Origin: Pecten maximus
Taxonomy: Eukaryota
Assembly: GCF_902652985.1 (NCBI RefSeq)
Contig: NC_047023.1
Coordinates: forward strand, 22,940,001-23,004,000
Reading direction: 5' to 3'
DNA length: 64,000 nt
Shown: piece by piece, positions 10,006 through 35,895 of the stretch
Layout of the letters: each line of letters opens with the position of its first letter
Numbering within the stretch: position 1 is the first letter of the stretch
Position numbers and translations under genes: made by a program
Notes under the pieces: generated by a model
Database searches by the model: none
The model's input: only the letters and a program-made list of their open reading frames with translations
What the model was told of the DNA's origin: nothing

Positions 10006-10418
10006 TGTCCCTAGCATCACTGATGAGTCCTTAAAATTGGAATACAGTATGGATGGCGGAACTATGATGTTGCTGGCATCACTGACGAGTCCTGAATGAC
10101 GAAACAACTGTATGATTTCATGGCAGCATTGAAGAGTTCTGAAGGCCGAAACAGCAGTATGATATTCCTAACATCACTAAAGAGTCACTAAAATAGGAAT
10201 ACGGTTTGAAAAAAACCTATGATGTCCCTAGCATTACTGATTAAGTCCTGAAATGACAAAATATCTGTAAGATGTCGCTAGCATCACTGACGAGTCCTTG
10301 AATGACGAAACAGCTGTTTGATGTCCCTAGCATTAATGACGATTCCCACAAGGACGGAACAGTTGTACGATGTCCCTAGCATCACATCACTGACGAGTCC
10401 TGTATGACTGTATGATGC
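10006..10418 (+). ncRNA. Tandem array of ~8 minimal type I hammerhead ribozyme motifs (47-62 bp units)
   Basis: Best copy 10281-10324: gcatca-CTGACGA-gtc/cttgaat/gac-GAAA-ca/gc/tg-TT-tgatgt (stem I, core, stem II, GAAA, minimal palindromic stem III, GUH site, stem I'). A second intact core lies at 10076-10116. The other units are degenerate. Confidence 0.8.
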
Positions 10419-13032: not shown

Positions 13033-15180
13033 CTATTCATCCTTCTCAGCTCTGGAGGTTGGTGGTCCAAACATTTGGACAAGCTTGTTACAGACCTTGA
13101 TGTTTCTATCAGTTATTGCAATATAGTATCCAAAGCGTTTTAAAGCCTTGGATCCTATTAGAGTGTCATTGTTCATAGGTGTCGCGTGATCGAAATCGAG
13201 AAGTACCATGTTGCGTCGGCCGTCCTCAGTGAAGTAGGAGAATGCACATTTGTATTCGATTACTGTAAATACATTAAGCCGACTGTGCTCTGATAGGACA
13301 ACAAGAATCGAGCGGGAGTGATAGGTGTGGAGTTTCAGTTCGCTTTCCTTTACCTTTCCTACATCAGTATCCAAGCATGGTGTGTAGACTTCATATCCCT
13401 TTTCTAAAAGAAATGGACGCAGAATTGTTAATACAAAAAATCGAACATCATCATTTTCATCGTCGAAGGAGAGATATATGTCATGCATCCATGATCTGTG
13501 CTGCTTCTTAATGCGCAGTCTTCTGGTGAAAAGAAGTATCTCGAATTTAAAGTAAATGACTACCAGTATCGCCGTTACAACAAGCATAAACACTCCAAAT
13601 CCAGAAGCCATTATACTGATAAGCTTTATATTAGTAGTTTTTGTACAATGTAAGAAATCGTCTGTGACTTCCTGTGCTTCCATTACAACTTTATTCGTGG
13701 AGCACCACAATGGATTACCTGAAAAATTGTCTCCTTTAATTCTCTTCCACTCTCCTATCCAAGTATTATCACAGTCACAAGGAATAGGAGCTTTCCCAAA
13801 TTCAAATTGGTCAGGATCTAGAAGTCTTATTGTTTCAGGAAGACTTTGAAGTTTGTGACCTTTCATAATCACATGTGCTGCTGTTCCAAGCGAATGCACG
13901 GCAGCTTTTGTTAATGTTGCAACGGGATTGTCGCTTAAGTCCAGGAAAGATACATGTTTCAGATAATCTCTGTTCTCGAGGTGAGAAATGTTGTTATTAG
14001 CTAGGTGCAATTGTATAGGATAAATGCTCTCAGGCATCCGCTTTGGGAGAGAGTGCAGACTAGAATTTTGACAGTCAACATTAAGGCGATAACTCGACGG
14101 TTGGTCTACACATGTACAACCTTTTGGACAATCCACTTTAACATCACATTGGAAGAGATGAAGTAAGCTTCTGTTATGCATAATACTATAGAAACTGTAG
14201 TTTGTCATTTTAGGTGGGGCTTCACAGAAAACATCTGTGATATTTTTCATCACGAAGAAACGCTTTTCGAAATCACTTATTACCTTATAAAGTGTAAAAA
14301 ATAAACCCATATGACAATCACAAACTATTGGTGTTTCATCCATAACACATTTTCCATGTACCATCACTTTGGAGAGTAAAGAGTAATCTTCTGGGTTATG
14401 TGCCAATAACACATTAAACGGGTTGTCTACAAGCTTATTGTAGGATAGCCGAACTGTTCCGCTCCCGTAAGTTTTATTAGGGTTCAGTCGATAGTTCTTG
14501 ATGTTAGTGAATTTTCCAAAAATGCTATGGTTAAAGTTTAACTCACAGAACAATGGGTTTTCTTCCATTATATTTGTAACGTCCATAGTTTGAAATATAT
14601 TTTCGGAAAAGTCCATGTGATAGATATGAGTCTTCGCTAGATTAAAAACATTCGGATCCATTCCTTTGATCAAGTTGTGAGAAAAATCCACAACTCGTAG
14701 ATTTATCAAGTTGATGAAAGTCGTATTTGAAATGTATCTCAGCTTATTTCCTTTCAACTTTAACGAATCGAGATGAACCAGACATGATATATTTGACATT
14801 TGTTCTATTCGGTTTTCCGTGAAGTCAATGGTCACCAAATGTGGAAAATCGCAAATATTTACCGGAAAGCGTTTCAAGCGTCCGGATATGTGTACAACAG
14901 AATCCACTGACTGTGGTGTTCTGTCTGTAACGTTAATCAGTCCTGCAGCCCATCGTACAGACACGTACTCGACGAACACATTTCTAATTGGGACGGACCG
15001 GTTTAAAATCCATGTTGGTTGGGAATCGCATGCGCAGCAACGATCAATGTAATGGTTACTTTGACACGACGAAGGACACATTAGATTGTCTTTACGTGGT
15101 CCATTACTAGGATGAAAAGGCAGAAATTGACCTTTGGTTATTTGTACTATAAGGGCAACCACCACTATAGCAAGCTCCAT
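13033..15180 (-). CDS. Toll-like receptor, protostome multi-cysteine-cluster type, 715 aa, intronless CDS (copy A)
   Basis: Signal peptide MELAIVVVALIVQITKG; LRRs (LDSLKLKGNKL, LRVVDFSHNLI); LRRCT (PIVCDC...FCEAP); internal LRRNT (CPKGCTC); second LRRCT (PIPCDC...WC); TM helix; TIR (HDIYLSF...SRSILVVLS...IEY). The start is placed at the ATG shared with copy B. Confidence 0.95.
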   Translation of the reverse strand: MELAIVVVALIVQITKGQFLPFHPSNGPRKDNLMCPSSCQSNHYIDRCCACDSQPTWILNRSVPIRNVFVEYVSVRWAAGLINVTDRTPQSVDSVVHISGRLKRFPVNICDFPHLVTIDFTENRIEQMSNISCLVHLDSLKLKGNKLRYISNTTFINLINLRVVDFSHNLIKGMDPNVFNLAKTHIYHMDFSENIFQTMDVTNIMEENPLFCELNFNHSIFGKFTNIKNYRLNPNKTYGSGTVRLSYNKLVDNPFNVLLAHNPEDYSLLSKVMVHGKCVMDETPIVCDCHMGLFFTLYKVISDFEKRFFVMKNITDVFCEAPPKMTNYSFYSIMHNRSLLHLFQCDVKVDCPKGCTCVDQPSSYRLNVDCQNSSLHSLPKRMPESIYPIQLHLANNNISHLENRDYLKHVSFLDLSDNPVATLTKAAVHSLGTAAHVIMKGHKLQSLPETIRLLDPDQFEFGKAPIPCDCDNTWIGEWKRIKGDNFSGNPLWCSTNKVVMEAQEVTDDFLHCTKTTNIKLISIMASGFGVFMLVVTAILVVIYFKFEILLFTRRLRIKKQHRSWMHDIYLSFDDENDDVRFFVLTILRPFLLEKGYEVYTPCLDTDVGKVKESELKLHTYHSRSILVVLSEHSRLNVFTVIEYKCAFSYFTEDGRRNMVLLDFDHATPMNNDTLIGSKALKRFGYYIAITDRNIKVCNKLVQMFGPPTSRAEKDE

Positions 15181-16759
15181 TTGAAAAACTACAGTCACGT
15201 TTAAATATTTCCGTTGCTCCTCAAAGGAATAGTCTTTAAAACTCACACTGCCTTCAACAACTGTATGTTCTCAATAAATGGAAACCTTTATCGCTACCAC
15301 TTGAACTAATCTTAAAGTAAAGAGTCCACATTTTGTATATTAACTGAAAAATGTCCTTCCTGTGGATTTTTTTTATCTGTTGAGCAGAGCACTTGCACTC
15401 TGTGCATCTTACATTTGTTTTCAATCAGAATTTTAACAAGAAGGAAGTCTGTAAAGATGCCCTTTAATAGGTATGTGATCGCTATTCTTTCTTCCTTATT
15501 GATTCAAATGTTTGCTGAGAAATAATTTTGTCAGGTTTGAGTAAGAAGGATCTTTGATTCTTAGTTCTAGCTTGATACAAAAATATGTTAGAATTTGTTC
15601 CGCGTATGAAAGACGTATATGAGAATAGTTCAATATGTACATTCTTCTGTTGTGTTGATTTTCCTAAGCTTGTGCACGCTTGTAAAGCAGACGTATACCT
15701 CCCCAGGTAAAACACAGAAAGGCTTGAACACTTGCATAATAGTTGATATCAGACATTGTTTATCCAGAGTATCAATACATGTATATGTAAGATAATTAGG
15801 TCAAAGAAAGGTAAGATAATTATGTCAAATAAAGGTAAGATAACTAAATTATATCAAGGTCAGATAATTAAGTAAAATAAGGGTCATATTATAAAGACAG
15901 GTTAAGAAACATTGAAACCAAAAAGTCAATTTTTTGTATTCATATCTTTACGCTTCGTTAAAATATCAGTAAAGAATACTAGTAAATTGCCGTATTAACA
16001 CACATGCTAATACTGAAATCTTTTCGTTGATTATCAACACAAATGGACTTCAATAGAAGTGGTTTGCATAAAAGCAGTTTGATAGTAGTGTAAGATACGA
16101 GGTTAATGTTTTTATCTGGTTAATAAAACTACAAAATGTATGTATATACCGAAATCAAGACTAAATCAGTTTAATCATAGAATGGTTGTCAAAAATATTG
16201 GTGAATGCAAGAAAATGTCAAATGAAAGATATTTCAACCTGAAGATAATCACTTAAAAAGATAGCTACAAATAAAAAAATGCAAGTTTAAAACACTTCAC
16301 ACTCCATATAATATACATTTTATGTATTAATTTTTAGATTACATAATCCTTACGTCTCTGGAAGTGTCTCCGTTATAAATAAACACAAGACATTAGACAT
16401 TGTTTGACAATGCTAAGGGGAAGTAATTGACAACATATAATCTATATATATATATTTTAAGAAGCATCCAGTCAATTAGCTGTTTTGGTTAACACGTTTA
16501 GTACGTAAGGTCGATATTGTTTTTGACACGGAGTCATATGACCTTACTTCAGCCGACCCAAATTTGTGAAAAATGTCATTTTATAATCATAAATATCATT
16601 CTAAACACTTACTATTTCATCAGCCACAAAGCAACCACGTGTTGTAATACAATCTGATGCACATTTATTATCATCACATAACAATGTCTTCATAATACTA
16701 TTGATGTTAAGGAGGTCAGTATTTAGCTACGAAATAAGTTTTTGACACTGATCAAAACA

Positions 16760-18907
16760 CTATTCATCCTTCTCAGCTCTGGAGGTTGGTGGTCCAAACA
16801 TTTGGACAAGCTTGTTACAGACCTTGATGTTTCTATCAGTTATTGCAATATAGTATCCAAAGCGTTTCAAAGCCTTGGATCCTATCAGAGTGCCATTGTT
16901 CACAGGTGTCGCGTGATCGAAATCGAGAAGTATCATGTTGCGTCTGCCGTCCATAGTGAAGTAGGAGAATGCACATTTGTATTCGATTACTGTAAATACA
17001 TTAAGTCGACTGTGTTCTGATAGGACTACAAGAACCGAGCGGGAGTGATAGGTGTGGAATTTCAGTTCGCTTTCCTTTACCTTTCCTACATCAGTATCCA
17101 AGCATGGTGTGTAGACTTCATATCCCTTTTCTAAAAGAAATGGACGCAGAATAGTTAATACAAAAAATCGAACATCATCATTTTCATCGTCGAAGGAGAG
17201 ATATATGTCATGCATCCATGATCTGTGCTGCTTCTTAATGCGCAGTCTTCTGGTGAAAAGAAGTATCTCGAATTTAAAGTAAATAGCTGCCAGTATCGCC
17301 GTTACAACAAGCATAAACACTCCAAATACAGAATCCATTATGCTGATAAGCCGTGTATAAGTAGTTTTTGTACAGTGTAAGAATTCGTCTGTGACTTCCT
17401 GTGCTTCCATTACAACTTTATTCGTGGAGCACCACAATGGATTACCTGATAAATTGTCTCCTTTAATTCTCTTCCACTCTCCTATCCAAGTATTATCACA
17501 GTCACAAGGAATAGGAGCTTTCCCAAACTCAAACTGATCAGGATCTAGAAGTCTTATTGTTTCAGGAAGACCTTGAAGTTTGTGACCTTTCAGACTCACA
17601 TGTGTTGCTGTTCCAAGCGAATGCACGGCAGCTTTTGTTAATGTTGTGACGGGGTTGTCGCTTAAGTCTAGAACTGATACACGTTTTAGATATCCTCTGT
17701 TCTCGAGGAGTGAAATGTTGTTATTAGCTAGGTGTAACTGTATTTGATGAATACTCTCAGGCATCCGCTTTGGGAGAGAATGCAGACTAGAATTTTGACA
17801 GTCAACATTAAGGCGATAACTCGACGGTTGGTCTACACAAGTACAACTTTTTGGACAATCCACTTTAACATCACACTCGAAAAGATGAAGTAAGCTTCTG
17901 TTATGAATAATACTAGAGATACTGTAGTTTGTCATTTTGGGTGGGGCTTCACAGAAAACATCTTTGATACTTTCCATCACGAAGAAACGCTTTTCGAAAT
18001 CACTAATTACATTATAACGTGTCAGCATTAAACCTACATGACAATCACACACTATTGGCGTTTTATCCATAACAAATCTTCCATGTACAATTACTTTGGA
18101 GATTAAAGAGTAATCTTCTGGGTGGTGTGCCAATAACACATTGTACGGGTGGTCTATAAACTTATTGTAGGATAGCCGAACTGTTCCACTCCCGTAAGTT
18201 GTATTAGGGTTCAGTCGATAATTCTTAACGTTTGTGAATTCCCCAAAAATGCTATGGTTAAAGTTTAACTCACAGAACAACGGTTTTTCTTCCATTATAT
18301 TTGTAACGTCCATTGTTTGAAATATATTTTCGGAAAAGTCCATGTGGTAGATATGAGTCTTCGCCAGATTAAAAACATTCGGATCCATTCCTTTGATCAG
18401 GTTGTGAGAAAAATCCACAGCTCGTAGATTTATCAAGTTGATGAAAGTCGTATTTGAAATGTATCTCAGCTTATTTCCTTTCAACTTTAACGAATCGAGA
18501 TGAACCAGACATGATATATTTGACATTTGTTCTATTCGGTTTTCCGTGAAGTCAATGGTCACCAAATGTGGAAAATCGCAAATATTTACCGGAAAGCGTT
18601 TCAAGCGTCCGGATATGTGTACAACAGAATCCACTGACTGTGGTGTTCTGTCTGTAACGTTAATCAGTCCTGCAGCCCATCGTACAGACACGTACTCGAC
18701 GAACACATTTCTAATTGGGACGGACCGGTTTAAAATCCATGTTGGTTGGGAATTGCATGCGCAACAGCGATCAATATAATGGTTACTTTGACACGATGAA
18801 GGACACATGATATTTTCTTTACGTTGTCCATCGCTAGGATGAAAAGGTAGGAATTGACCACTAGTCATTTGCACTATAAGGACAACCACCACTATAGCAA
18901 GCTCCAT
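16760..18907 (-). CDS. Toll-like receptor, 715 aa, intronless CDS (copy B, tandem paralogue)
   Basis: Colinear with copy A, same length (2148 nt), offset 3727 bp, same domain architecture. Confidence 0.95.
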   Translation of the reverse strand: MELAIVVVVLIVQMTSGQFLPFHPSDGQRKENIMCPSSCQSNHYIDRCCACNSQPTWILNRSVPIRNVFVEYVSVRWAAGLINVTDRTPQSVDSVVHISGRLKRFPVNICDFPHLVTIDFTENRIEQMSNISCLVHLDSLKLKGNKLRYISNTTFINLINLRAVDFSHNLIKGMDPNVFNLAKTHIYHMDFSENIFQTMDVTNIMEEKPLFCELNFNHSIFGEFTNVKNYRLNPNTTYGSGTVRLSYNKFIDHPYNVLLAHHPEDYSLISKVIVHGRFVMDKTPIVCDCHVGLMLTRYNVISDFEKRFFVMESIKDVFCEAPPKMTNYSISSIIHNRSLLHLFECDVKVDCPKSCTCVDQPSSYRLNVDCQNSSLHSLPKRMPESIHQIQLHLANNNISLLENRGYLKRVSVLDLSDNPVTTLTKAAVHSLGTATHVSLKGHKLQGLPETIRLLDPDQFEFGKAPIPCDCDNTWIGEWKRIKGDNLSGNPLWCSTNKVVMEAQEVTDEFLHCTKTTYTRLISIMDSVFGVFMLVVTAILAAIYFKFEILLFTRRLRIKKQHRSWMHDIYLSFDDENDDVRFFVLTILRPFLLEKGYEVYTPCLDTDVGKVKESELKFHTYHSRSVLVVLSEHSRLNVFTVIEYKCAFSYFTMDGRRNMILLDFDHATPVNNGTLIGSKALKRFGYYIAITDRNIKVCNKLVQMFGPPTSRAEKDE

Positions 18908-24800: not shown

Positions 24801-25919
24801 ATATGAACAAAGAATATAGATTTGTATGGAGGCCTTAAAAGTACCAGGAGGACACGATAGGGTAATCTGGATTTAGACTTCAGACAAAATTAAAACTTCC
24901 CCTTGTGTACATTACAACTAACTGTTACCATTATATGAACGTACTGTACCGTCGAATTTAAATCTTGCCATGAGCTTTCAAGAGTTATTCCCCTTGAAAC
25001 TGTTCGTGATGGTAGAATATATTTATTTAATTGGGGATGTTTTTGTACGCAGTAACCTGTCTCTTGATTCTGTTTCACATGTAGAAATAGGCTTCGTTTT
25101 AATTTCACCAATACATTGTATACGACGGTAAAGGTCAGGTTGATTCGACCTGCTTGAAAGTGTTTTGAGTTATGAAAAATAATGTTTGCAGAAGAAAAGG
25201 AAAACAGAAATACGAAAAGTAATTTCGAAGACAGACAACTGTGTCAAAACAAGGCGAATTCCATGTTAAATATATTCTGCGTTACACACAGGATTTTGAG
25301 AGGCATAGAGGTATCGATATCAGTGATATTTGTTTGCCTTATTGGTATGATTTCGCGGTGAGAAGGTGACGTCACATGCTCTATTTGCCTGGTGTTGCTG
25401 ATGATTTCCCCTTGTAAAAGTCTGGAATCGCTTCTGTCACCCCATCCCTCTTATACTCATATGAACGGGCCTTACACGATTGTTGTTATAGGTGTTTTAA
25501 TTTTGAACGTTTAAGGCTGGTTAATCAATATATAAAATGGGGTCAAATTGTGATTTGAAAAAGAACACGATGTTATCGTTTTTCCCTAATATATTTTTAA
25601 TGTGCACCTTTAAATTTCAAGTCAATATTATAAAACCAAACTTTCGTTCGGATGGTACAGTGCACTTGGTTACACACTTGCTTTTCATCTTGGTTGGTTT
25701 TCCCATGGTACACCAGTTTTCTCCAACGGAAAGATCCCTCGCGTGCGTCCATCCGGCCAACAATCGTGATTTATATAAACTGGTAAAGCTTACAAATCAC
25801 TCAGTGTAAAAGAATGTTTTGGTCTCGGAACTTCTCATCAGCACATTTAATTTTTCTTTTGATTATATATGGAATATGTGTTAATGCTTTCTTCTAGAGA
25901 AGCAAGGTTAAATCACATA

Positions 25920-26335
25920 ATAATTTGTTTAGTCACAGAAATAATCTGTTTCGTCACAGAGATAATCTATTTAGTCACAGGTATATACAATATATTTAGT
26001 TACAGCGATAATCTATTTAGTCACAGCGGTAATCTATTTAGTCACAGACACAATCTATTTAGTCACAGAGATACTCTTTTTAGTCAGAGATAATCTATTT
26101 AGTCACAAACACAATCTATTTAGTCACAGAGATAATGTATTTAGTCACAAAGATAATCTATTTAGTCACATGATTATCTGTTAAGTCAACGACATAATCT
26201 GTTTAGTCACAGAGATACTCTGTTAAGTCACAGAGATAATATATTTAGTCACAAAGATAATCTATTTAGTCACATGAGTATCTGTTAAGTCAACGACATA
26301 ATCTGTTTAGTCACAGAGACACTCTTTTCAGTCAC
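25920..26335. repeat. Minisatellite, ~21-bp unit (gataatctatttagtcacaga), ~19 copies
   Basis: Directly visible periodicity. Confidence 0.9.
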
Positions 26336-26520
26336 CTAGGAATCGGCTCATGCCGGCTGAGAAGACTACATGGTGATAGGAGCTGTTTTGATTTGTGTTC
26401 GTTCCGGAATATTATTAATAGTAAACTGATTTACATATAACCGTTTAAACAATATTACGGTTATCTTTTGCATGACCTTTACAGTACTACTGAACAGTAA
26501 GGTTAGACTGTATGACTTGT

Positions 26521-27045
26521 TGTTGGAGGAGGGCAAACATCTGTGTGAGTTGATGTTGGAGGAGGGCAAACATCTGTGTGAGCTGATGTTGGAGGAGGGC
26601 AAACATCTGTGTGAGTTGATGTTGGAGGAGGGCAAACATCTGTGTGAGCTGATGTTGGAGGAGGGCAAACATCTGTGTGAGTTGATGTTGGAGGAGGGCA
26701 AACATCTGTGTGAGCTGATGTTAGAGGAGGGCAAACATCTGTGTGAGCTGATGTTGGAGGAGGGCAAACATCTGTGTGAGCTGATGTTGGAGGAGGGCAA
26801 ACATCTGTGTGAGCTGATGTTGGAGGAGGGCAAACATCTGTGTGAGTTGATGTTGGAGGAGGGCAAACATCTGTGTGAGTTGATGTTGGAGGAGGGCAAA
26901 CATCTGTGTGAGCTGATGTTGGAGGAGGGCAAACATCTGTGTGAGTTGATGTTGGAGGAGGGCAAACATCTGTGTGAGTTGATGTTGGAGGAGGGCAAAT
27001 ATCTGTGTGAATTGATGTTGGAGGAGAACAAACATCTGTGTAAGC
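26521..27045. repeat. Minisatellite, 33-bp unit (ttggaggagggcaaacatctgtgtgag(c/t)tgatg), ~16 copies
   Basis: Near-identical units; produces 11-aa periodic ORFs in several frames. Confidence 0.96.
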
Positions 27046-27829
27046 TTGAGTGTGTAACGGAAACACCTCACTGCAGCACCAGTACAACTTCGCTAGCCAA
27101 GGGTGTTCAATACGATACTCTCCTTTTCCTTTGCTAGCGATCGAAGTTATTACCAATGAGTAAGGGGAGATAACTCGAAGAGCAATAGTCGCAATTGACT
27201 AATATTTCATTTATGGTGTTATGCATACGGTTATTATTCTCATCGTTAAGCAGTCAGCCAGTGTGAATCAATATCCATTCATTCAGAAATATATTGGGGT
27301 TTATAAAACTTATAATTAGTTTTAATTATTTTTACAGCAAGACACTGTTGCGCCTTAGCCTTATGGCTCAACTGATTTGTTGTTTTGGGGCTGCATCCGT
27401 CGTCTGTAAACTTTCCATGACAAATTTTGATGAAATGTCAGGTGAATCATCGATTTCTTTCACGTTTTCAGTGAAAATGAAATTAGAGATAACCGCCATC
27501 TTTAGAATCGCTTTTGAAGTAAAAGCTCAAGTTATATTTGAATGAAACTTTGTCCGAATCTTAAGTAGAGGATTTGGCAAAACATTCGTGTGAACAAGTA
27601 CATCTACATGATTTTTGCTATTTTTTGTGGACATTGGATAAGTAACGTGTTATTTGTAGCTAGAATGTGCCATGCATTATATTTTAATTAGTTTTATTTA
27701 AGTGTATTAAAGATATATATTTAGTTCATCTTTAATAAACCCTAATTTTTAGTATATCGATATTGATTAGTAAAAGACGACGGGTACACAAGAAGGCTAA
27801 AATGACAAATAGGGTACATTACTGGGCAA

Positions 27830-30295: not shown

Positions 30296-30974
30296 CACGT
30301 TCTCACATATAACACTTTCAACTCTAATTTACTATAAATATCCTCTAGTACAATATTATATATTAGTCTCTTGAGTATACCGAAACCTATTTACGAGAAA
30401 TATATTGAAATTCGATAAACATATGAATGCAACCGGATTTGGTTGTATAGGTATTTTAAAATAATTATCATTAGTTGGATTTCAAACAGAATCTTATTTC
30501 ATATTACATTGATATGAAATGGAATATGCTAAATTGTATAATTAACACAAATATTAAGACACAACTTCAATCATTTGGTAAAAACACAGGTCCTGATCTC
30601 GTGATCAACATTGACAAGTGTACCGTCACGTGGTAATAAGTAAGATCACTCGGATAATGTACAAAATGACAAATGTAGCGACATAAAAGACACAGGTAAG
30701 CTTAATGACATTTCCTATACTTCACAGCAAAATACGTTTGATAGCTGGGCTGCAGTTAACGCCACATCAGTACTTGAGAGGATATTGCGAAACAAGTGAT
30801 GCTAGGTATCAACAATGTCTAAAGATGAGATCAAAACATATGGACAGTTTTTGTACAGTAAAGTCTTATATTGTAAAACACCAAAATAGTTTGTTTGTTT
30901 GTTTGTTTCTCTCTTTTTTTTCTTCAAAAAATATTTCAGTAATAATCTTTCACATTTCACCCTTGATTACTGAT

Positions 30975-32918
30975 TTAATAGTGAAACGATTTGCATGTCA
31001 CATCAAACGAGGTCTGACGTGTAATACATCGGTTGTCTTCCCATTGCTTCTTCCGGTACCCCTTGCGCATGACGAGCCAAGGATCACTTTCGTACTCCTC
31101 TGCGATGGACTCTTCGTCCTTAGCAATGATCAGGCTGGTGAGGAGTTTTTTCAGGGCCGTCCATTCCTCTTCAGATTCTGTGTGAATCTTCAATAACGGG
31201 TCAGTGCTATTCACAAGACGCCTTGCTCTTCCAATAAGAGGCGAATTTCCTTCCTCTGACATATTGACGACTTCTTTAAGTTGATCCAGCAGTTCTGCGA
31301 TGCGAGTTTCGTCGATAGATTTGAGAGCAGTGAAGAGTTGTTCCCGGAGGGCGTCATATTCCTTGGTGATGGATCCTTCGAAGTACATTGTGTCTAGTCG
31401 GGCTAGGAGCTTAACACCTCGTCCGCGTGTGGTGTTTGCAGCGTCGTTTCGACTTTCAAGAATCTTTGGGATGTTTTCTTCTGTGTAGGGGCCATGCATT
31501 CCTGTCTGTCCGTCCATGAACCTGAGTACCTGGGCCCCACCGATGCCGATACCGTCCACACCAGCATACACAGCATGTTTGATTTCGTTGAATTTAAACC
31601 CGGCAGAAAAATAGGTGACAAGTCCCCTGATGTGGGCCTCATGGACAATTGTCAGAGCCTCCTCAAATGTCAACTGGTACATGATGCATTTGGAAGGGTA
31701 GGTGTCGCTAGCGCCGTCCCAGGTGATCTTATCAAAACCACCAATGGACGTAATCTCGATAGCTCTTGAAGCTATAGCCATTCTCTCATTCAGTTTGCAG
31801 GGCGGAGACTGCTCGTAGTCATCTGTAACGATTTGGTTAAGGTTCCAGGCGGCTGACAAGAACTGTTTCCTGTTTCTCTGAACCTGTCCCCTGAGTGACT
31901 GCATATATCGCACGGCCTGTGACGTGCTCAGTCCCTCCATAGAGACCTTACACTCTGCTGCTCCCTGTAAAAACGCTGCCGTGGCAGACGCTGCAGTTAT
32001 ATTGACTAGCTTCAAGAAATCCTCTTCAAAGTTCCCGGAATCTTTCACTCTTCGTCCAACAAAGTATGTAGTTGGAGCACTGGAACCAACGTGTAATCTT
32101 ACTTTGGAGAAATCGAGCATTGACGGAATTCGATACGACTCGATGTTCTGCCGCGGTAGATTTCGAGGACGCTCCAAATGTTCGACGTGGACAATTGAAC
32201 CTTCCATCCATTCATTAAATCGGGTGGTTCCTAACACATGGCCCTCTCCAGGGTCGGTGAGGGACATGTAGGTCTGTGAAGAAGGGCGGAACCCTGGGGT
32301 GCCCAACCCTCGCGCGTTTTGGTGGTGCCCCTGGTATCCATGGGACAGGTTGTAGTACGCCAACTGGAAGGCGAAGTATTCTACGGGAGTAGGTTGTCGC
32401 TTCTGATCACGAAGTATCTGTGCCATCCTAGTTACAGAAGCCATGTAATCTTTTGGCAGCGTCTCCTTGTCCCAGTGAAGGTGGACTCTGTTGTTGTCAT
32501 CGTCAATAGTCGCCTCAAATAGGGACATATCCCGAGGGGTCGGAATCATGCCCACGTATAACTCGTTTTCTACCCCCCAGGATTCTATCACCTTGGTTGC
32601 CTCTTTTCCTGCCTTCTCCACGTCGGACATAATGCATCTGACTTTCTTTGTTTCTATCATGCTTTCGCATATGTCCCAGAATGGACCCTGGCACTTATCC
32701 TGTCCAGGGGAGATGTGTTTTAGTCTCTCACACACATGGTCTTTAACGGTGCTGAAGTCCACTGCCGTTCTAACCGGAAGTTCTCTCTCGGACCGGAAGG
32801 GCTCGGTCTGACTATCGATTTTTACCCTTACATTGTAGACATTCTGTAGAACATCCTGGAGGTAGGCCAGTGCCACTTTCCTCAATTTCCCTATACCAAT
32901 AGTACACATGTTCTCAGC
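30975..32918 (-). CDS. Main coding exon of an uncharacterised ~648-aa protein with a putative MfnB/DUF556-like TIM barrel
   Basis: Uninterrupted 647-codon frame plus stop, visibly GC-richer than its flanks. Splice acceptor tttcag|GCT GAG AAC ATG at 32920-32919 (phase 0). Motifs: GAAECKV, GGFDKITWDGA, VHEAHIRGLVTYFSAG, GVDGIGIGGA. Coding status is high confidence; family assignment is moderate. Confidence 0.88.
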   Translation of the reverse strand, partial: AENMCTIGIGKLRKVALAYLQDVLQNVYNVRVKIDSQTEPFRSERELPVRTAVDFSTVKDHVCERLKHISPGQDKCQGPFWDICESMIETKKVRCIMSDVEKAGKEATKVIESWGVENELYVGMIPTPRDMSLFEATIDDDNNRVHLHWDKETLPKDYMASVTRMAQILRDQKRQPTPVEYFAFQLAYYNLSHGYQGHHQNARGLGTPGFRPSSQTYMSLTDPGEGHVLGTTRFNEWMEGSIVHVEHLERPRNLPRQNIESYRIPSMLDFSKVRLHVGSSAPTTYFVGRRVKDSGNFEEDFLKLVNITAASATAAFLQGAAECKVSMEGLSTSQAVRYMQSLRGQVQRNRKQFLSAAWNLNQIVTDDYEQSPPCKLNERMAIASRAIEITSIGGFDKITWDGASDTYPSKCIMYQLTFEEALTIVHEAHIRGLVTYFSAGFKFNEIKHAVYAGVDGIGIGGAQVLRFMDGQTGMHGPYTEENIPKILESRNDAANTTRGRGVKLLARLDTMYFEGSITKEYDALREQLFTALKSIDETRIAELLDQLKEVVNMSEEGNSPLIGRARRLVNSTDPLLKIHTESEEEWTALKKLLTSLIIAKDEESIAEEYESDPWLVMRKGYRKKQWEDNRCITRQTSFDVTCKSFHY

Positions 32919-34935
32919 CTGAAACGATAAAATAATGTACTTAACAAAAACCTTTACAGATTAATTAATAAAAAAAGAAGTAAGTATATATCTATGTATG
33001 CACATTCTTCTACGTTAATTGTATACTTATTCCTTATTATTCATAGTTGTTTTAATACTTAACAATTTTAGTGTATATTATGAGTATAAGTAACAGATAT
33101 TCATGAACAAATATTTACTAATAACCAGGAAAATAAGTTTAAAACTACATTTTTATATGTACATAGCCATTGAATAATACATGCTATATATCGTTAGCAG
33201 GAATGATTTTAATGGATCAAGTCTAAAGAAATGGATTATAGATTGGTTTTAATGTTTAGAATATATTTCATAATACTTGGTACACATATACGTGTGCACA
33301 CATTAACCTCAATTCACAAAGACTTGACACATCCATATGACCCAGAACTAAAAATAACCCCCTTAATAACTTGTCAATATTAAATGATCAAGGGTTGATC
33401 TTTGTGATTATCTTATTTCATTGGTGTTCCAGCATCGTGTCACGCCCCTGTACCATGGAAAACAAACTTCAATAACTTATCATTTCCGCCACCATTCCTC
33501 CCTAGATAGATTGTCTTCAGTTTTCTCAAACGTTTATTCAAAATAATTTACAAAATATGTATAGAAAAGCATTAATAATCAAGTACTTTCTATATTAAGA
33601 TCAAAGCCATGGTTTACTACGTTAAAATGTTCTCTGAATTAGACTAATTAAAGTAGGTATTATTATTTGATACTATCATTGTAACAACAATCAAATAGTG
33701 TTATCCTACACTTATATAATGTTTCAAGCATATGTATCTAGATATATGATTTCAATTATAATTACAGCTTCTATATATTAAATGGTAAAATAAAGAAAAT
33801 AATAAATTAAATTCAGACATCTCAGAATGTTATTCTTGTTGTCATAATATACAGTAACATAAATTGTATTCATTAATATAAATTTAACATCGCTATCTAA
33901 TTAGACAGATATTAAAACCCTCGTCTGCGTACAATAAATTAATGTGTCACTTCAATGTGATGTATTTTAGTTGTATACATGCATTACATTATTTCTTAGA
34001 CTTCCGGGTTGTGTTGTTCAAAAGGTGATTAGTATTATAATTTGATGTGTGATAATCACATTCTCCTTACGTCAAAGCCTCCGTATGCATATTCCTTTAA
34101 ATATGCATGTAGGAAGTGACTGAAGAGTGTGATAGTATCTGAAGAAGCTTATAAGGGCTTTCACATGAATATTATATCTCAATATTTTTACTTAATGCTC
34201 TTCCGTATATTTTGTAGATTTTTTTCCTTATTCAATTCATTAGTTCTGTTTTTCTAGACTTGTAAAATATTTCGTCTGCAAAGTCAGATATCTATGTTGT
34301 GTTAGTTACAAGAATTTAAATGTAAATGAGCAAAGCATTTTAATACTGCTACAATTGTAATTGTTTGTCAATATACGTTAAGTTGTTTTATGATATAAAC
34401 ATCTAGTAGTTATATTTTGTTCAATACTTACCGTATAAGATAGCTATAACTACATAGTTTATAAAGTGAGCTAGATTAATAGTTAAAACTTAAAAATTCA
34501 GATAATTATATTACGATCAGTACTTGTAAATATATATCATTGCAAATACAATAAGTCAAGATGAGGAGATGTAGTTCTTTACCAGGGATAATTAAGTCAA
34601 AATATTGAGATATATTTTTGTGATGGCCCCAATAAGCATCCGTGAATATACACCTGTATCAGAGACCCAATTATTCTCGTTATAAGCATTTTTTTGTTAC
34701 TTTGTATTTAAAGAAATTTGTAAGATATATGAAATAACTAAGATTATTTTATAGATATACAAGAAGTATGTCTGTCTAAATAAAACTACGTTTACATGTA
34801 TTTGTTTACCGGGATACGAATACCAATATTTATTACATTTTACCAGTGAAATATCGGAAATTATTCATCCTATAAAATGATATTTTTTCCAGTTAAAACA
34901 CTGTTTACAAATGATAATCGGGAAAAATAAACCGA

Positions 34936-35092
34936 ATATCTAACAGTATCTTCAATAATACCAAATATATTTCACTTCTGTGGCTAATATTTTGATATTT
35001 TTTTCACTCGTGCTGCGCGGTCGTGAAAAATATCATAATATAAGCCACACTCGTGAAATTTGTTTGGTATTACTGAAGACACCGTTAGATAT
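34936..35092. mobile_element. ~157-bp imperfect palindrome (foldback MITE-like) in the predicted intron
   Basis: atatctaacagtatcttcaataataccaaa pairs with tttggtattactgaagacaccgttagatat; inner arms tggctaatatt/aatataagcca and tttttcac/gtgaaaaa. Confidence 0.75.
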
Positions 35093-35815
35093 CTTCTATA
35101 TATCATTGTAATTGTTTAACATGTAAGCCTATAAGCTGTAGTTAATAAAAATGTAACTGAGCATTACTCATATTAAGCGTCAATTTATAAAGATAGATAA
35201 CGTGTATTGCTAAACTAAGACGCGTTTCTGTGGGATTTATAAATTAATTTGTATATTTTAGCAGTTGTACTTAGCTATCAAATTATGATGATTTTATTAT
35301 CAATCATTTTTGTTTTGCCAAGGTAAGCTGTTAACGACACTACTGGATGTGTATTAGATGTATATCAGATCGTTGATAGCCATGATAACGCATAAATATT
35401 GTGTACATCGTTCATGAGCCCTAATTTGTAGTATATCATAGTGCAGCAACATTCATCTTACTCTTAGATCTCTAGATCTGTCTCTCTTCCTGTCATTCTT
35501 CTTTGCTTTTCTTTCTTTATAATCAGTATACTGTGTCGCTATCACAAACTTTGTAATATATATTTGTGGAGAGGACTTTTATAAGATGTTAAAAACTGTC
35601 CTATCCAATTGTGTCTAAACAATTAAATACGTTCAAATCAACGCATATATTATATAAATACAATCCCTGAGAGATGTTTGAGGCTTACAAAAAATATTAA
35701 GTTATTTATGTGTTAATTTATCATCTTCGCAATTAGAAATATTTTTGATATTATAATTATACAAATCTAAATGCTAGCCTTACTTTTGACAAGCGTATTA
35801 AGTTTCCACACTTAC

Positions 35816-35864
35816 CATTTCTGTGAGTGGTTGTGATGTGAGCGCGATCAGTTGAGCTCGGAAT
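35816..35864 (-). other. Predicted first exon (5' UTR + ATG only) of the TIM-barrel gene
   Basis: Minus strand ...cacagaaATG|GTAAGT: perfect donor at 35815-35810, in phase 0 with the acceptor at 32919; purine at -3 and G at +4 after splicing. Confidence 0.7.
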
Positions 35865-35895
35865 GGCAAGGTAGGCTTACCAGGCTAGTTATATA
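35860..35895 (-). promoter_or_regulatory. TATA box + initiator core promoter
   Basis: TATATAA at 35895-35889 and Inr-consensus CCATTCC with its A at 35864, 31 nt downstream of the first TATA base. Confidence 0.6.

What the first reader, a model, noticed from the sequence alone, without database searches (positions are those of the whole stretch)
30975..32918. Animal gene encoding a remote homologue of the prokaryotic MfnB/DUF556 TIM-barrel enzyme
Seen: a single 1.94-kb coding exon for a protein matching no animal family I recognise. Recalled knowledge: MfnB (4-HFC-P synthase, methanofuran biosynthesis) is a class I aldolase-like (beta/alpha)8 barrel. By eye, the segment at ~32275-31450 is colinear with it over all eight strands: TYMSLTDPGEG~LLVSPxDVEEA, IVHVEH~IIDVKN, TTYFVG~VSATVG, AFLQGAAECKVSMEG~AxSGADYIKVGLYG, FLSAAW~VVAAGY, GGFDKITWDGA~AGCDVAMLDTA, IVHEAHIRGLVTYFSAGF~FVDEAHxYGLxCALAGSI, GVDGIGIGGA~GTDIVGVRGA. 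About 210 N-terminal and 150 C-terminal extra residues flank the barrel. Inference: an undescribed metabolic enzyme, possibly horizontally acquired, acting on phosphorylated small molecules in a marine invertebrate.
Basis: partly seen in the sequence, partly recalled or inferred. Interest (0 to 1): 0.85.

Follow-up and report, generated by a model that had tools for sequence, protein, structure and literature searches.

The report
Scallop enzyme distantly related to MfnB
An expressed, spliced scallop gene encodes a member of an unnamed enzyme family, shared by bacteria, protists, fungi and molluscs, whose barrel-shaped core is a distant, rewired relative of the archaeal furan-making enzyme MfnB and probably acts on sugar phosphates.

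Summary
Window 30975-32918 (-) is the main exon of a two-exon Pecten maximus gene (648 aa). RNA-seq contigs splice it across a 2,897-nt GT..AG intron to an exon that supplies the ATG.

MfnB (MJ1099) is the top PDB match by two aligners: Foldseek E 2e-7, and VIA Z 21.2 against 16.2 for the next hit. Profile-profile comparison agrees (96-97%, E 1e-9 to 6e-11).

It is not an MfnB orthologue. PF04476 misses it, the Schiff-base Lys27 and Asp25 are gone (His241/Glu243 in strand register), and only the Lys85 and Asp151 equivalents remain.

The family has no Pfam or NCBIfam model and every named member is "hypothetical". It occurs in five bacterial phyla, Amoebozoa, diplonemids, green algae, fungi and molluscs. 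Bacterial operons pair it with a TIGR02817 dehydrogenase (fused once), an HxlR regulator and DJ-1/PfpI. Fusions add ribose-5-phosphate isomerase, LOG/SLOG, phosphatase and PhnD-like domains. I infer a sugar-phosphate (probably pentose-phosphate) lyase or aldolase.

The tree gives no positive support for horizontal transfer. A snail orthologue rises about 7-fold in parasite-encapsulating hemocytes. Another first-stage note (s1-792473) covers this same stretch.

The parts
35816..35886 (-). Exon 1 (3' part seen): 5'UTR ending in the start codon ATG at 35818-35816, followed by the GT donor at 35815-35814
   Evidence: Sequence. An RNA contig from X7 covers 35815-35886 and joins to exon 2. P0001 starts M|AEN.
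32919..35815 (-). Intron, 2,897 nt, GT..AG. It contains a repeated element at about 34830-35224.
   Evidence: The joint 32917->35815 (cut +1) appears in runs X4, X5, X7 and X2. The three RNA-Seq runs have no depth over most of the intron.
30300..32918 (-). Exon 2: codons 2-648, the stop at 30975-30977, and a 3'UTR that continues beyond 30300
   Evidence: Contigs cover 30300-32917 and run off the low end of the laid stretch. ORF; acceptor.
32283..32909 (-). N-terminal domain (ORF residues 1-209): helices plus a beta-hairpin. It is conserved in eukaryotes and in some Actinomycetota. It was not searched on its own.
   Evidence: Model secondary structure. Loci L004, L014 and L026 match from residues 3-7.
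31446..32282 (-). (beta/alpha)8 barrel (residues 210-488), remotely homologous to MfnB
   Evidence: Foldseek 4rc1/4u9p: E 2e-7, TM 0.77-0.81. VIA: Z 21.2, rmsd 2.7 A, 232 of 241 residues aligned. hhalign: 96-97%.
32178..32189 (-). beta2 motif H241-V-E243-H244. It occupies the place of MfnB's D25-V-K27-N28, so no lysine is present here.
   Evidence: H241 and E243 are each kept in 129 of 132 family members. Strand 238-242. MJ1099 numbering. The register is inferred from strand correspondence; hhalign is low-confidence in this region.
31947..31949 (-). K321 on beta4 (E-C-K-V-S), the equivalent of MfnB Lys85
   Evidence: Kept in 131 of 132 members. hhalign pairs it with the YIKVG lysine.
31716..31730 (-). 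beta6 K394-I-T-W-D398. D398 is the equivalent of MfnB Asp151. K394 is a family-specific, near-invariant lysine at a position where the MfnB sequences have a small hydrophobic residue.
   Evidence: K394 in 125 of 132 and D398 in 130 of 132 members. The alignment places WDGA on LDTA.
31536..31607 (-). beta7-beta8 glycine-rich motifs, S-A-G-F (435-438) and G-I-G-I-G-G (453-458). They correspond to MfnB's LAGS and GVRGA, but the arginine (R217) is replaced by glycine.
   Evidence: S435, G437, G453, G455 and G457 are near-invariant. Alignment. The role of R217 comes from PMC11365854.
31020..31445 (-). C-terminal all-helical domain (residues 489-630), conserved from bacteria to molluscs (motif R-L-D-x-M-[FY]-F-E-G-S). 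No solved structure resembles it.
   Evidence: The stand-alone model has pLDDT 92.8. The best VIA Z is 5.1, to generic three-helix bundles. The motif served as a search pattern.
30978..31019 (-). Low-confidence C-terminal tail (residues 631-644)
   Evidence: pLDDT below 50 for 631-638 and 641-644.

Best explanation
**What it is**
This is a bona fide, expressed mollusc gene. It has two exons, with the start codon split off by a 2.9-kb intron. It encodes a cytosolic enzyme of about 650 aa from an ancient family that has no name or model.

**Architecture**
- The catalytic core is a (beta/alpha)8 barrel that shares ancestry with MfnB (4-HFC-P synthase).
- It carries a family-specific N-terminal domain and a conserved C-terminal helical domain.
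- The active site is rewired. MfnB's Schiff-base Lys27 and Asp25 on beta2 are replaced, by His241 and Glu243 in strand register.
- The Lys85 and Asp151 equivalents (K321, D398) and the glycine-rich beta7/beta8 loops are kept.
- A new invariant lysine (K394) sits on beta6.

**Shown here**
- The gene model and its expression.
- The fold and the homology to MfnB.
- The loss of Lys27.
- The family's taxonomic spread.
- The gene contexts and domain fusions.

**Inferred**
- The enzyme binds a small phosphorylated sugar, most likely ribose or ribulose 5-phosphate.
- It carries out lyase or aldolase-type chemistry, such as phosphate elimination, dehydration or C-C bond making or breaking. It may use K321 or K394 as nucleophile or base, or a His/Glu/Asp metal site.
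- The product is a reactive carbonyl or enone. In bacteria the co-transcribed TIGR02817 MDR dehydrogenase then reduces it, under the control of an HxlR-type regulator.
- In molluscs it is probably a housekeeping or stress-type metabolic enzyme that is induced in activated hemocytes.
For: **Gene and expression**
- establish the ORF, the splice sites and the spliced transcripts.
- An intact paralogue (66% identical) lies on the same chromosome.

**Fold and homology**
- The model has pLDDT 89.3 and pTM 0.89.
- MJ1099 is the top hit by Foldseek.
- By VIA, MJ1099 scores Z 21.2 and the next barrel 16.2.
- hhalign of 132 family cores against 25 PF04476 proteins gives 96.4% and E 1.3e-9 (local), and 97.3% and E 6.4e-11 (global).
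- In the ESM Atlas the nearest named clusters are PF04476.
- Fusion protein P0249 scores 20.7 bits on PF04476, against a cut-off of 22.4.

**Active site**
- Conserved residues are listed, and MJ1099 numbering.
- Lys27 is the Schiff-base residue, and two Lys plus two Asp are essential (PMC6604932).
- Lys155 and R217 are discussed in PMC11365854.

**Substrate inference**
- The MDR gene sits directly upstream, overlapping or within about 20 nt of the family gene, in L031, L032, L041 and L025. It neighbours the family gene in 13 loci and is fused to it in L001.
- The MDR partner is always TIGR02817, at 407-467 bits against a cut-off of 284.
- An HxlR regulator is present in 10 loci.
- DJ-1/PfpI is present in 3 loci.
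- PhnD-like PF12974 fusions occur in L029, L037, P0144, P0148, P0160 and P0250.
- A barrel+SLOG+RpiA+phosphatase architecture occurs in Mastigella, Rhynchopus and P0214. P0188 (Cavostelium) and P0197 (Desulfobacter) combine the barrel with a SLOG domain. A permuted RpiA+LOG+barrel occurs in P0249.
- A nucleoside-phosphorylase-superfamily fusion occurs in P0238.
- G6PD is a neighbour in 4 myxobacterial loci, and GH65 plus two HAD hydrolases in 3 actinomycete loci.

**Mollusc biology**
- The Biomphalaria orthologue was detected as protein and rose from 4.05 to 28.37 spectral counts in resistant hemocytes encapsulating schistosome sporocysts (PMC6281880 Table 3).
Against: - No biochemical data exist for any member, so substrate and reaction are inferred only from context.
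- The contexts are heterogeneous (MDR/HxlR, multicopper oxidase, G6PD, GH65). They point to 'sugar phosphate or reactive carbonyl' rather than to one compound.
- No TIGR02817-type MDR was found in the scallop genome by six-frame search (inconclusive because of introns). The bacterial two-enzyme logic may therefore not carry over to molluscs.
- The beta2 register, and so the exact replacement of D25 and K27, could not be checked by superposition, because model coordinates are not exposed.
- The phosphate-clamping Arg217 of MfnB is lost.
- SLOG fusions could instead point to processing of nucleotide or ADP-ribose derivatives.
Confidence: 0.6

Rival explanations
1. It is a true MfnB orthologue that makes 4-HFC-P from glyceraldehyde-3-phosphate for a methanofuran-like cofactor.
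For: MfnB is the nearest fold and profile match. The Lys85 and Asp151 equivalents are kept.
Against: - The PF04476 HMM finds nothing in the scallop genome at E<=10. Only 1 of 30 members gives even a sub-threshold hit.
- There is no lysine anywhere in the beta2 region, where the Schiff-base Lys27 lies. Asp25, Lys155 and Arg217 are also not conserved.
- The protein is 2.7 times longer than MfnB.
- Streptomyces cinerochromogenes carries both a genuine MfnB and this family as separate genes.
Confidence: 0.02
2. The gene entered molluscs by horizontal transfer. The donor was either bacterial and recent, or a fungus or protist that transferred it into the mollusc stem lineage.
For: - Among animals, only molluscs appear in the 120 best hits.
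- The coding sequence is almost intron-free.
- In the free tree, molluscs sit next to chytrids and Mucoromycota inside the fungi, with weak support (85).
Against: - Recent bacterial transfer is excluded. The gene has an intron, is spliced and expressed, has two paralogues, and has orthologues in chiton, gastropods and bivalves. Bacteria and eukaryotes separate at 99.
- Ancient transfer from a eukaryote is not supported. Holding the fungi monophyletic gives an equally good tree (p-AU 0.53), which is what vertical opisthokont descent with losses predicts.
- Other animal genomes could not be searched with these tools.
Confidence: 0.25
3. It processes a nucleotide- or NAD/ADP-ribose-derived molecule as part of an immune or conflict pathway, rather than acting in central sugar-phosphate metabolism.
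For: - It is fused to SLOG/LOG, nucleoside-phosphorylase-superfamily and cytidylyltransferase-like domains.
- SLOG domains are linked to ADP-ribose-derived signals (PMC9503650).
- The snail orthologue is induced in parasite-encapsulating hemocytes.
- Two LRR+TIR genes lie 12-18 kb away in the window.
Against: - PADLOC finds nothing for the scallop or bacterial proteins.
- The commonest bacterial partners are an MDR dehydrogenase, HxlR and DJ-1, not defence genes.
- RpiA in the fusions points to free ribose 5-phosphate.
- The adjacency to Toll-like receptor-type genes may be coincidental; from general knowledge, such genes are very numerous in mollusc genomes.
Confidence: 0.12
4. It is an aldehyde-fixing aldolase analogous to 3-hexulose-6-phosphate synthase. 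It would condense a toxic aldehyde (formaldehyde, glycolaldehyde or methylglyoxal) with ribulose 5-phosphate as a detoxification route.
For: - HxlR-family regulators flank it in 10 loci. From general knowledge, the founding member HxlR controls the hexulose-phosphate synthase operon in response to formaldehyde.
- DJ-1/PfpI (glyoxalase III/deglycase) neighbours are present.
- RpiA fusions would supply ribulose 5-phosphate.
- Hexulose-phosphate synthase is among the next-best folds, at Z 15.9.
Against: - It is clearly closer to MfnB than to hexulose-phosphate synthase (Z 21.2 against 15.9).
- No 6-phospho-3-hexuloisomerase partner was seen in the loci.
- This is really a sub-case of the best explanation, not an independent one.
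Confidence: 0.12
5. It is a non-catalytic ligand-binding or scaffold protein, a pseudoenzyme that has lost MfnB's catalytic lysine.
For: The Schiff-base lysine and Asp25 are lost. The protein carries large extra helical domains.
Against: - About 20 polar residues at the C-terminal ends of the strands are conserved in at least 93% of 132 members from bacteria to animals.
- Scallop and bacterial proteins are 35-51% identical.
- It sits in operons with, and is fused to, enzymes.
Confidence: 0.06

Closest known systems
MfnB / 4-HFC-P synthase (MJ1099; PF04476, formerly UPF0264/DUF556; PDB 4U9P, 4RC1)
   Same: - It has the same (beta/alpha)8 barrel, with all eight strands colinear: VIA Z 21.2, rmsd 2.7 A, 232 of 241 residues aligned.
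- Profile-profile probability is 96-97%.
- The Lys85 (beta4) and Asp151 (beta6) equivalents are kept.
- The beta7 and beta8 loop motifs are similar.
   Different: - There is no Schiff-base Lys27 and no Asp25; H-V-E-H stands in their place.
- Lys155 and Arg217 are not kept.
- A new invariant Lys394 sits on beta6.
- It has about 210 extra N-terminal and about 155 extra C-terminal residues.
- It is not detected by PF04476.
- It occurs in eukaryotes and in non-methanogenic, non-methylotrophic bacteria.
- Its gene context is different (MDR, HxlR, RpiA, LOG).
Deoxyribose-phosphate aldolase (DERA) and other class I aldolase barrels
   Same: - It has the TIM-barrel fold (Z about 15.4).
- Its conserved Lys and Asp residues sit on strands.
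- Its invariant lysine on beta6 (K394) is, from general knowledge, on the strand that carries the Schiff-base lysine in DERA and most class I aldolases.
   Different: - No sequence similarity is detectable.
- Whether K394 or K321 forms a Schiff base is untested.
- The His and Glu pair on beta2 is not a class I aldolase feature.
3-Hexulose-6-phosphate synthase (HxlA), under HxlR control
   Same: - It is a barrel enzyme (Z 15.9).
- Its context implies ribulose 5-phosphate and HxlR-type regulation.
   Different: - It is a more distant fold match than MfnB.
- It belongs to a different superfamily, with different motifs.
- No isomerase partner was seen.
CutC
   Same: It is the second-best fold match (Z 16.1-16.2, about 215-220 residues aligned).
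   Different: It shares only 10% identity and no motifs, and it lies 5 Z units below MfnB.

Membership tests
MfnB / PF04476 4HFCP_synth | Scores above the Pfam gathering threshold (22.4 bits) | tested here: not met
   - There is no PF04476 hit for the protein at E<=10 or in the whole scallop genome.
- Only 1 of 30 family members gives a sub-threshold hit, at E 0.031.
- The best family score is 20.7 bits, for fusion protein P0249.
MfnB / PF04476 4HFCP_synth | (beta/alpha)8 barrel superposable on MJ1099 | tested here: met
   - Foldseek: E 2e-7, TM 0.77-0.81 normalised to the target.
- VIA: Z 21.2, rmsd 2.7 A, 232 of 241 residues aligned, 5 Z units above the next hit.
MfnB / PF04476 4HFCP_synth | Detectable common ancestry at profile level | tested here: met
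   hhalign gives 96.4% and E 1.3e-9 in local mode, and 97.3% and E 6.4e-11 in global mode.
MfnB / PF04476 4HFCP_synth | Schiff-base Lys27 and Asp25 on beta2 (D-x-K) | tested here: not met
   - The beta2 region, G-[AS]-I-V-H-V-E-H-L-E-R-P, contains no lysine in any register.
- H241 and E243 are each conserved in 129 of 132 members.
- The essential role of Lys27 comes from PMC6604932.
MfnB / PF04476 4HFCP_synth | Essential Lys85 (beta4) and Asp151 (beta6) | tested here: met
   K321 (131 of 132) aligns with Lys85, and D398 (130 of 132) aligns with Asp151.
MfnB / PF04476 4HFCP_synth | Lys155 and the phosphate-capping Arg217 | tested here: not met
   hhalign places D402 opposite Lys155 and G457 opposite Arg217, so G-V-R-G-A has become G-I-G-G-A. 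The roles of these residues come from PMC11365854.
MfnB / PF04476 4HFCP_synth | Converts two glyceraldehyde-3-phosphate molecules to 4-HFC-P | not testable with these tools
   This needs an enzyme assay.
Class I (Schiff-base) aldolase superfamily | A catalytic lysine inside the barrel that forms an imine with substrate | tested here: inconclusive
   Two near-invariant strand lysines exist, K321 on beta4 and K394 on beta6. Whether either forms an imine is unknown. The His/Glu/Asp cluster could instead bind a metal.
The unnamed ~650-aa family itself (bacteria to molluscs) | Full-length similarity, including the T-D-P-G-[DE]-G-H, H-V-E-H-L-E-R-P, G-G-F-D-K-x-T-W-D-G-A and R-L-D-x-M-[FY]-F-E-G-S motifs and the C-terminal helical domain | tested here: met
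   - The search found 187 homologues, and the exhaustive search found 320 clusters at 50% identity.
- 41 bacterial loci hold homologues 34-51% identical to the scallop protein.
- Conservation is shown.
Anti-phage defence systems (PADLOC) | Match to a known defence-system component | tested here: not met
   No PADLOC hit for the scallop protein, for two bacterial homologues or for the MDR partner.

The most novel reading that the evidence does not exclude
The family could be a missing enzyme that turns a pentose phosphate (ribulose 5-phosphate, supplied by the fused RpiA and LOG domains) into a reactive dicarbonyl or 4-hydroxy-3(2H)-furanone-type product. It would do this by phosphate elimination, dehydration and cyclisation, which is an enzymatic version of the known spontaneous route from ribulose 5-phosphate to 4,5-dihydroxy-2,3-pentanedione and on to furanone/AI-2. 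This would parallel MfnB's phosphate-eliminating, furan-forming chemistry. The TIGR02817 MDR partner would act as the enone or carbonyl reductase. In molluscs the product could serve activated hemocytes as a signal or a cytotoxic compound.
Probability: 0.12. Interest if true: 0.85.

Novelty: new variant of a known kind. Interest (0 to 1): 0.62.

Why it matters
- **An unnamed, ancient family.** It has about 650 residues and is 35-51% identical between scallop and bacteria. It spans five bacterial phyla, Amoebozoa, diplonemids, green algae, fungi and molluscs. It has no Pfam or NCBIfam model, and every named member is 'hypothetical' or 'uncharacterized'.
- **A starting point for the mechanism.** Tying it to the MfnB barrel shows an aldolase-type scaffold that lost its Schiff-base lysine and gained new invariant residues. 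This would be a natural case of active-site migration or rewiring.
- **A short list of testable substrates.** The conserved partners (a TIGR02817 dehydrogenase, an HxlR regulator, DJ-1/PfpI) and the fusions (RpiA, LOG/SLOG, phosphatases, a PhnD-like domain) narrow the candidates to a few sugar phosphates.
- **A handle on an immune-cell protein.** Protein-level induction in schistosome-killing snail hemocytes gives an otherwise anonymous protein of the snail-schistosome interaction a predicted fold and a candidate class of chemistry.

Tried and rejected
- **Sequence-level searches found nothing useful.** These were Pfam, NCBIfam and PDB phmmer, plus the A1 profile against the PDB. The weak hits (L15e, interferon-beta, HEAT_RRP12_N) are noise.
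- **PF04476 in the scallop genome:** nothing found.
- **PF04476 in 201 sampled Alphaproteobacteria:** none found, so this gave no MfnB sequences. A call using a locus id as the centre failed on syntax.
- **First hhalign attempts were mis-specified.** The forced-global run on the shallow A1 core gave 1% probability with a shifted register. A badly formed a3m gave 55%. Both were superseded by the clean mafft-based runs.
Gene context therefore rests on my own ORF calls in 41 loci plus Pfam scans. In the high-GC loci I trusted only neighbour clusters conserved across genera.
- **Defence-system reading:** PADLOC finds nothing.
- **TIGR02817 MDR partner in the scallop genome:** not found by six-frame search. 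This is inconclusive for intron-containing genes.
- **C-terminal domain fold search:** no meaningful match, best Z 5.1.
- **Complex prediction was not used,** because I make no binding claim.
- **A literature search for the family** under MfnB, SLOG or RpiA terms found no description.
- **The Plakobranchus annotation** 'pNRC100 replication protein H-like' (P0039) is taken as a spurious transferred name.
Full report
**1. The observation**

- The window holds a 644-codon ORF at 30975-32909 on the minus strand.
- A database protein identical to it, P0001, has 648 aa and begins M-A-E-N before the ORF's first Met. It comes from a 45.5-Mb contig that also carries a Pecten maximus paralogue.
Exon 1 ends ...ATG|gtaagt at 35818-35816.
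- Twenty public runs from eight studies hold the exon.
- I laid contigs from three runs recorded as RNA-Seq (one study) and a fourth run from another study. Contigs of 2,856-2,921 nt cover the exon and a 3'UTR that runs beyond 30300. They then jump 2,897 nt to 35815/6, and the skipped stretch has GT..AG ends on the gene strand.
- The three RNA-Seq runs have no depth over most of the intron.
- The gene is therefore real, spliced and transcribed.
- A second intact copy (66% identity) lies 1.97 Mb away on the same chromosome. Both copies have Mizuhopecten orthologues.

**2. Fold and relationship to MfnB**

- Sequence methods see nothing: Pfam, NCBIfam, PDB phmmer and a family profile against the PDB.
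- An AlphaFold2 model built on a 35-sequence alignment is confident (pLDDT 89.3, pTM 0.89). It shows eight beta-strands alternating with helices at 214-219, 238-242, 280-285, 319-323, 350-356, 394-398, 431-435 and 453-456.
- Foldseek against the PDB ranks MJ1099 (MfnB; 4RC1 and 4U9P) first: E 2e-7, TM 0.77-0.81 normalised to the target, 16% identity.
- An all-against-representatives search with a different aligner also ranks it first: Z 21.2, rmsd 2.7 A, 232 of 241 residues aligned, model range 210-488. It stands five Z units above CutC, hexulose-phosphate synthase and DERA.
- For a test independent of the structure prediction, I collected genuine PF04476 proteins. One came from a Streptomyces genome that also carries our family, eight more from related actinomycetes, and sixteen from Gammaproteobacteria.
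- I compared their profile with a 132-sequence profile of our family's core. The result was 96.4% probability and E 1.3e-9 in local mode, and 97.3% and E 6.4e-11 in global mode.
- The ESM Atlas feature search lists PF04476 clusters as the nearest named ones.
- One fusion member of our family nearly reaches the PF04476 threshold, at 20.7 against 22.4 bits.

**3. It is not an MfnB orthologue**

- PF04476 finds nothing in the scallop genome even at E<=10, although the same search rings in the methanogen controls.
- Only 1 of 30 family members gives a sub-threshold hit.
- Aligning the Streptomyces MfnB to the solved chain fixes MJ1099 numbering: D25 and K27 lie in I-I-D-V-K-N, K85 in Y-I-K-V-G and D151 in M-L-D-T-A.
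- The literature states that two Lys and two Asp are essential and that Lys27 forms the Schiff base (PMC6604932). It also describes Lys155 as catalytic and Arg217 as a likely phosphate ligand (PMC11365854).
- In our family the mapping is as follows:
  - K321 (131 of 132 members) aligns with Lys85.
  - D398 (130 of 132) aligns with Asp151.
  - The beta2 segment reads G-[AS]-I-V-H-V-E-H-L-E-R-P and has no lysine in any register.
  - Asp402 stands opposite Lys155.
  - Gly457 stands opposite Arg217.
- By strand correspondence, His241 replaces Asp25 and Glu243 replaces Lys27. hhalign's own placement here is low-confidence and shifted by five residues. I could not superpose coordinates, so this register is inferred.
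- A family-specific lysine, K394 (125 of 132), lies on beta6, on the same face of the strand as D398.
- Other near-invariant polar residues are D219, H224, R247, Y259, R260, R286, Q349, D364, S406, H423, H426 and S435.
- This agrees in part with the other first-stage note on this stretch (s1-792473). The H-x-E-H replacement is right, but 'other catalytic positions kept' holds only for the Lys85 and Asp151 equivalents.

**4. The extra domains**

- The barrel is flanked by about 209 N-terminal residues (helices plus a hairpin) and about 156 C-terminal residues.
- The C-terminal domain is conserved from bacteria to molluscs and folds confidently on its own (pLDDT 92.8). It has no structural relative among the PDB representatives: the best Z is 5.1, to generic three-helix bundles.
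- The N-terminal domain was not searched separately.

**5. Distribution and origin**

- The family is sizeable, with 320 clusters at 50% identity.
- Named eukaryotic members come from these groups:
  - bivalves, gastropods and a chiton;
  - chytrids, Mucoromycota, Basidiomycota and an ascomycete;
  - Tetraselmis and MMETSP algae;
  - as multidomain fusions, the amoebozoans Mastigella and Cavostelium and the diplonemid Rhynchopus.
- Bacterial members, 34-51% identical to the scallop protein, occur in Actinomycetota, Myxococcota, Bacillota (including Lactobacillaceae), Cyanobacteria and Pseudomonadota. A fusion member comes from Desulfobacter.
- Every bacterial member that carries a name is called 'hypothetical' or 'uncharacterized' and has no Pfam domain.
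- A maximum-likelihood tree of 63 core domains gives this picture:
  - bacteria separate from eukaryotes (99);
  - molluscs are monophyletic (100);
  - molluscs group with fungi (95);
  - green algae lie outside that group.
- The free tree places molluscs beside early-diverging fungi, but only weakly (85). Constraining the fungi to be monophyletic is not rejected: p-AU is 0.53 and the constrained tree is marginally better.
- Recent bacterial transfer and contamination are therefore excluded. The gene was present in the mollusc ancestor.
- Vertical opisthokont descent with loss in other animals is at least as good an explanation as an ancient transfer. Other animal genomes could not be searched with the tools at hand.

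**6. What it probably does**

Gene context in the 41 bacterial loci:
- An MDR-type dehydrogenase neighbours the family gene in 13 loci and is fused to it in Glycomyces (L001, 995 aa). It lies directly upstream on the same strand, overlapping or within about 20 nt, in Lactobacillaceae and a gammaproteobacterium. In all three tested cases it belongs to NCBIfam subfamily TIGR02817 (407-467 bits, cut-off 284).
- An HxlR-family regulator is present in 10 loci.
- DJ-1/PfpI, a deglycase/glyoxalase III-type protein, is present in three loci.
- A multicopper oxidase is present in six loci.
- Glucose-6-phosphate dehydrogenase is present in four myxobacterial loci.
- A GH65 phosphorylase with two HAD-type hydrolases is present in three actinomycete loci.

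Domain fusions:
- An N-terminal PhnD-like phosphonate/phosphite-binding domain occurs in Rhizobium, a Nostocaceae cyanobacterium and four further clusters.
- A barrel + SLOG + ribose-5-phosphate isomerase A + phosphatase architecture occurs in Mastigella, Rhynchopus and P0214. Cavostelium (P0188) and Desulfobacter (P0197) combine the barrel with a SLOG domain.
- The permuted order RpiA + LOG + barrel occurs in P0249.
- A cytidylyltransferase-like + nucleoside-phosphorylase-superfamily + barrel architecture occurs in P0238.

Interpretation:
- LOG enzymes release ribose 5-phosphate from nucleotides, and RpiA interconverts ribose and ribulose 5-phosphate (established knowledge).
- The common thread is a phosphorylated sugar, most simply a pentose phosphate, entering the barrel, with a carbonyl or enone product passed to the reductase.
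- PADLOC sees no defence signature.
- I therefore propose a sugar-phosphate lyase or aldolase, with K321, K394 and D398 and the His/Glu pair as the catalytic set. This part is inference; no member has been assayed.

A more specific idea rests on two points:
- MfnB's own chemistry is phosphate elimination followed by aldol condensation, cyclisation and dehydration to a furan.
- Ribulose 5-phosphate is known to convert spontaneously into 4,5-dihydroxy-2,3-pentanedione and then a furanone/AI-2. Enzymes for furanone ring formation are still unknown, and the one known downstream enzyme is an enone oxidoreductase first named a quinone oxidoreductase (PMC2443158, PMC6269858).

The family might catalyse such a conversion. 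I rate this at about 12%.

**7. Mollusc biology**

- The Biomphalaria glabrata orthologue (LOC106051655, which is P0032, 58% identical) was identified as protein in hemocytes.
- Its normalised spectral counts rose from 4.05 to 28.37 in resistant BS-90 hemocytes encapsulating Schistosoma mansoni sporocysts (PMC6281880, Table 3).
- This is independent protein-level evidence, and it links the gene to activated immune cells in an oxidant-rich setting.
- In the window the gene lies 12-18 kb from two LRR+TIR genes. I treat that as possibly coincidental.

**8. Verdict**

  - The gene belongs to a distinct sister family with a rewired active site, not to DUF556/MfnB itself.
  - The family is widespread in eukaryotes.
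  - HGT has no positive support.
- In novelty terms it is a new variant of a known kind: a new family within the MfnB/aldolase-type barrels.
- Interest is moderately high, because the family is large, ancient, entirely unannotated and now has concrete, testable substrate hypotheses.

Noticed in passing
window 13033-15246 (-) and 16760-18907 (-): Two tandem single-ORF genes of 737 and 715 aa carry LRR_8, LRR_4 and LRRNT domains and a sub-threshold TIR match, so they look like Toll-like receptor-type genes. They lie 12-18 kb from the barrel gene.
   Followed up: partly
window 54141-57620 (+): A 1,159-aa ORF has an endonuclease/exonuclease/phosphatase domain and a reverse transcriptase domain, which marks it as a LINE-type retrotransposon.
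   Followed up: partly
window 25913-26335 and 26508-27049: There are two minisatellites: a 21-bp unit x 20 copies (78% matches) and a 33-bp unit x 16.4 copies (95% matches). The second explains the three overlapping ~220-aa ORFs on both strands and the local GC-skew peak.
   Followed up: partly
window ~34830-35224 (inside the intron): A repeated element shows up here. Many short RNA contigs with loose ends pile onto it at high summed depth, presumably from copies elsewhere in the genome.
   Followed up: no
window 32415: All four runs read A where the assembly has T on the + strand. This is the third codon position of residue 165 and is probably an allele.
   Followed up: no
L065 (G000:C9:24945828-24947759, -): An intact paralogue, 66% identical, lies 1.97 Mb from the window copy. 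It matches LOC117334967 (P0009). In the beta6 motif it has Asn in place of D393.
   Followed up: partly
L042:1492-2247 (+) and L006: Streptomyces cinerochromogenes carries both a genuine PF04476 MfnB (E 1.6e-78) and a member of the new family, on different contigs. The two families are therefore distinct and coexist.
   Followed up: partly
P0051 (Lottia gigantea, 805 aa) and P0039 (Plakobranchus): One Lottia gene model joins the family to a PF08398 phospholipase A2-like domain, which may be a gene-model merge. A Plakobranchus member is named 'pNRC100 replication protein H-like', which looks like a spurious transferred name.
   Followed up: no
P0177 (5,969 aa; NCBI contig of 127,901 bases): A giant protein carries the family barrel at about residues 3229-3612. 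It was too long to scan for domains here.
   Followed up: no
window 10006-10418: Another first-stage note (s1-792195) reports a tandem array of very short hammerhead-ribozyme-like units here. I did not examine it.
   Followed up: no
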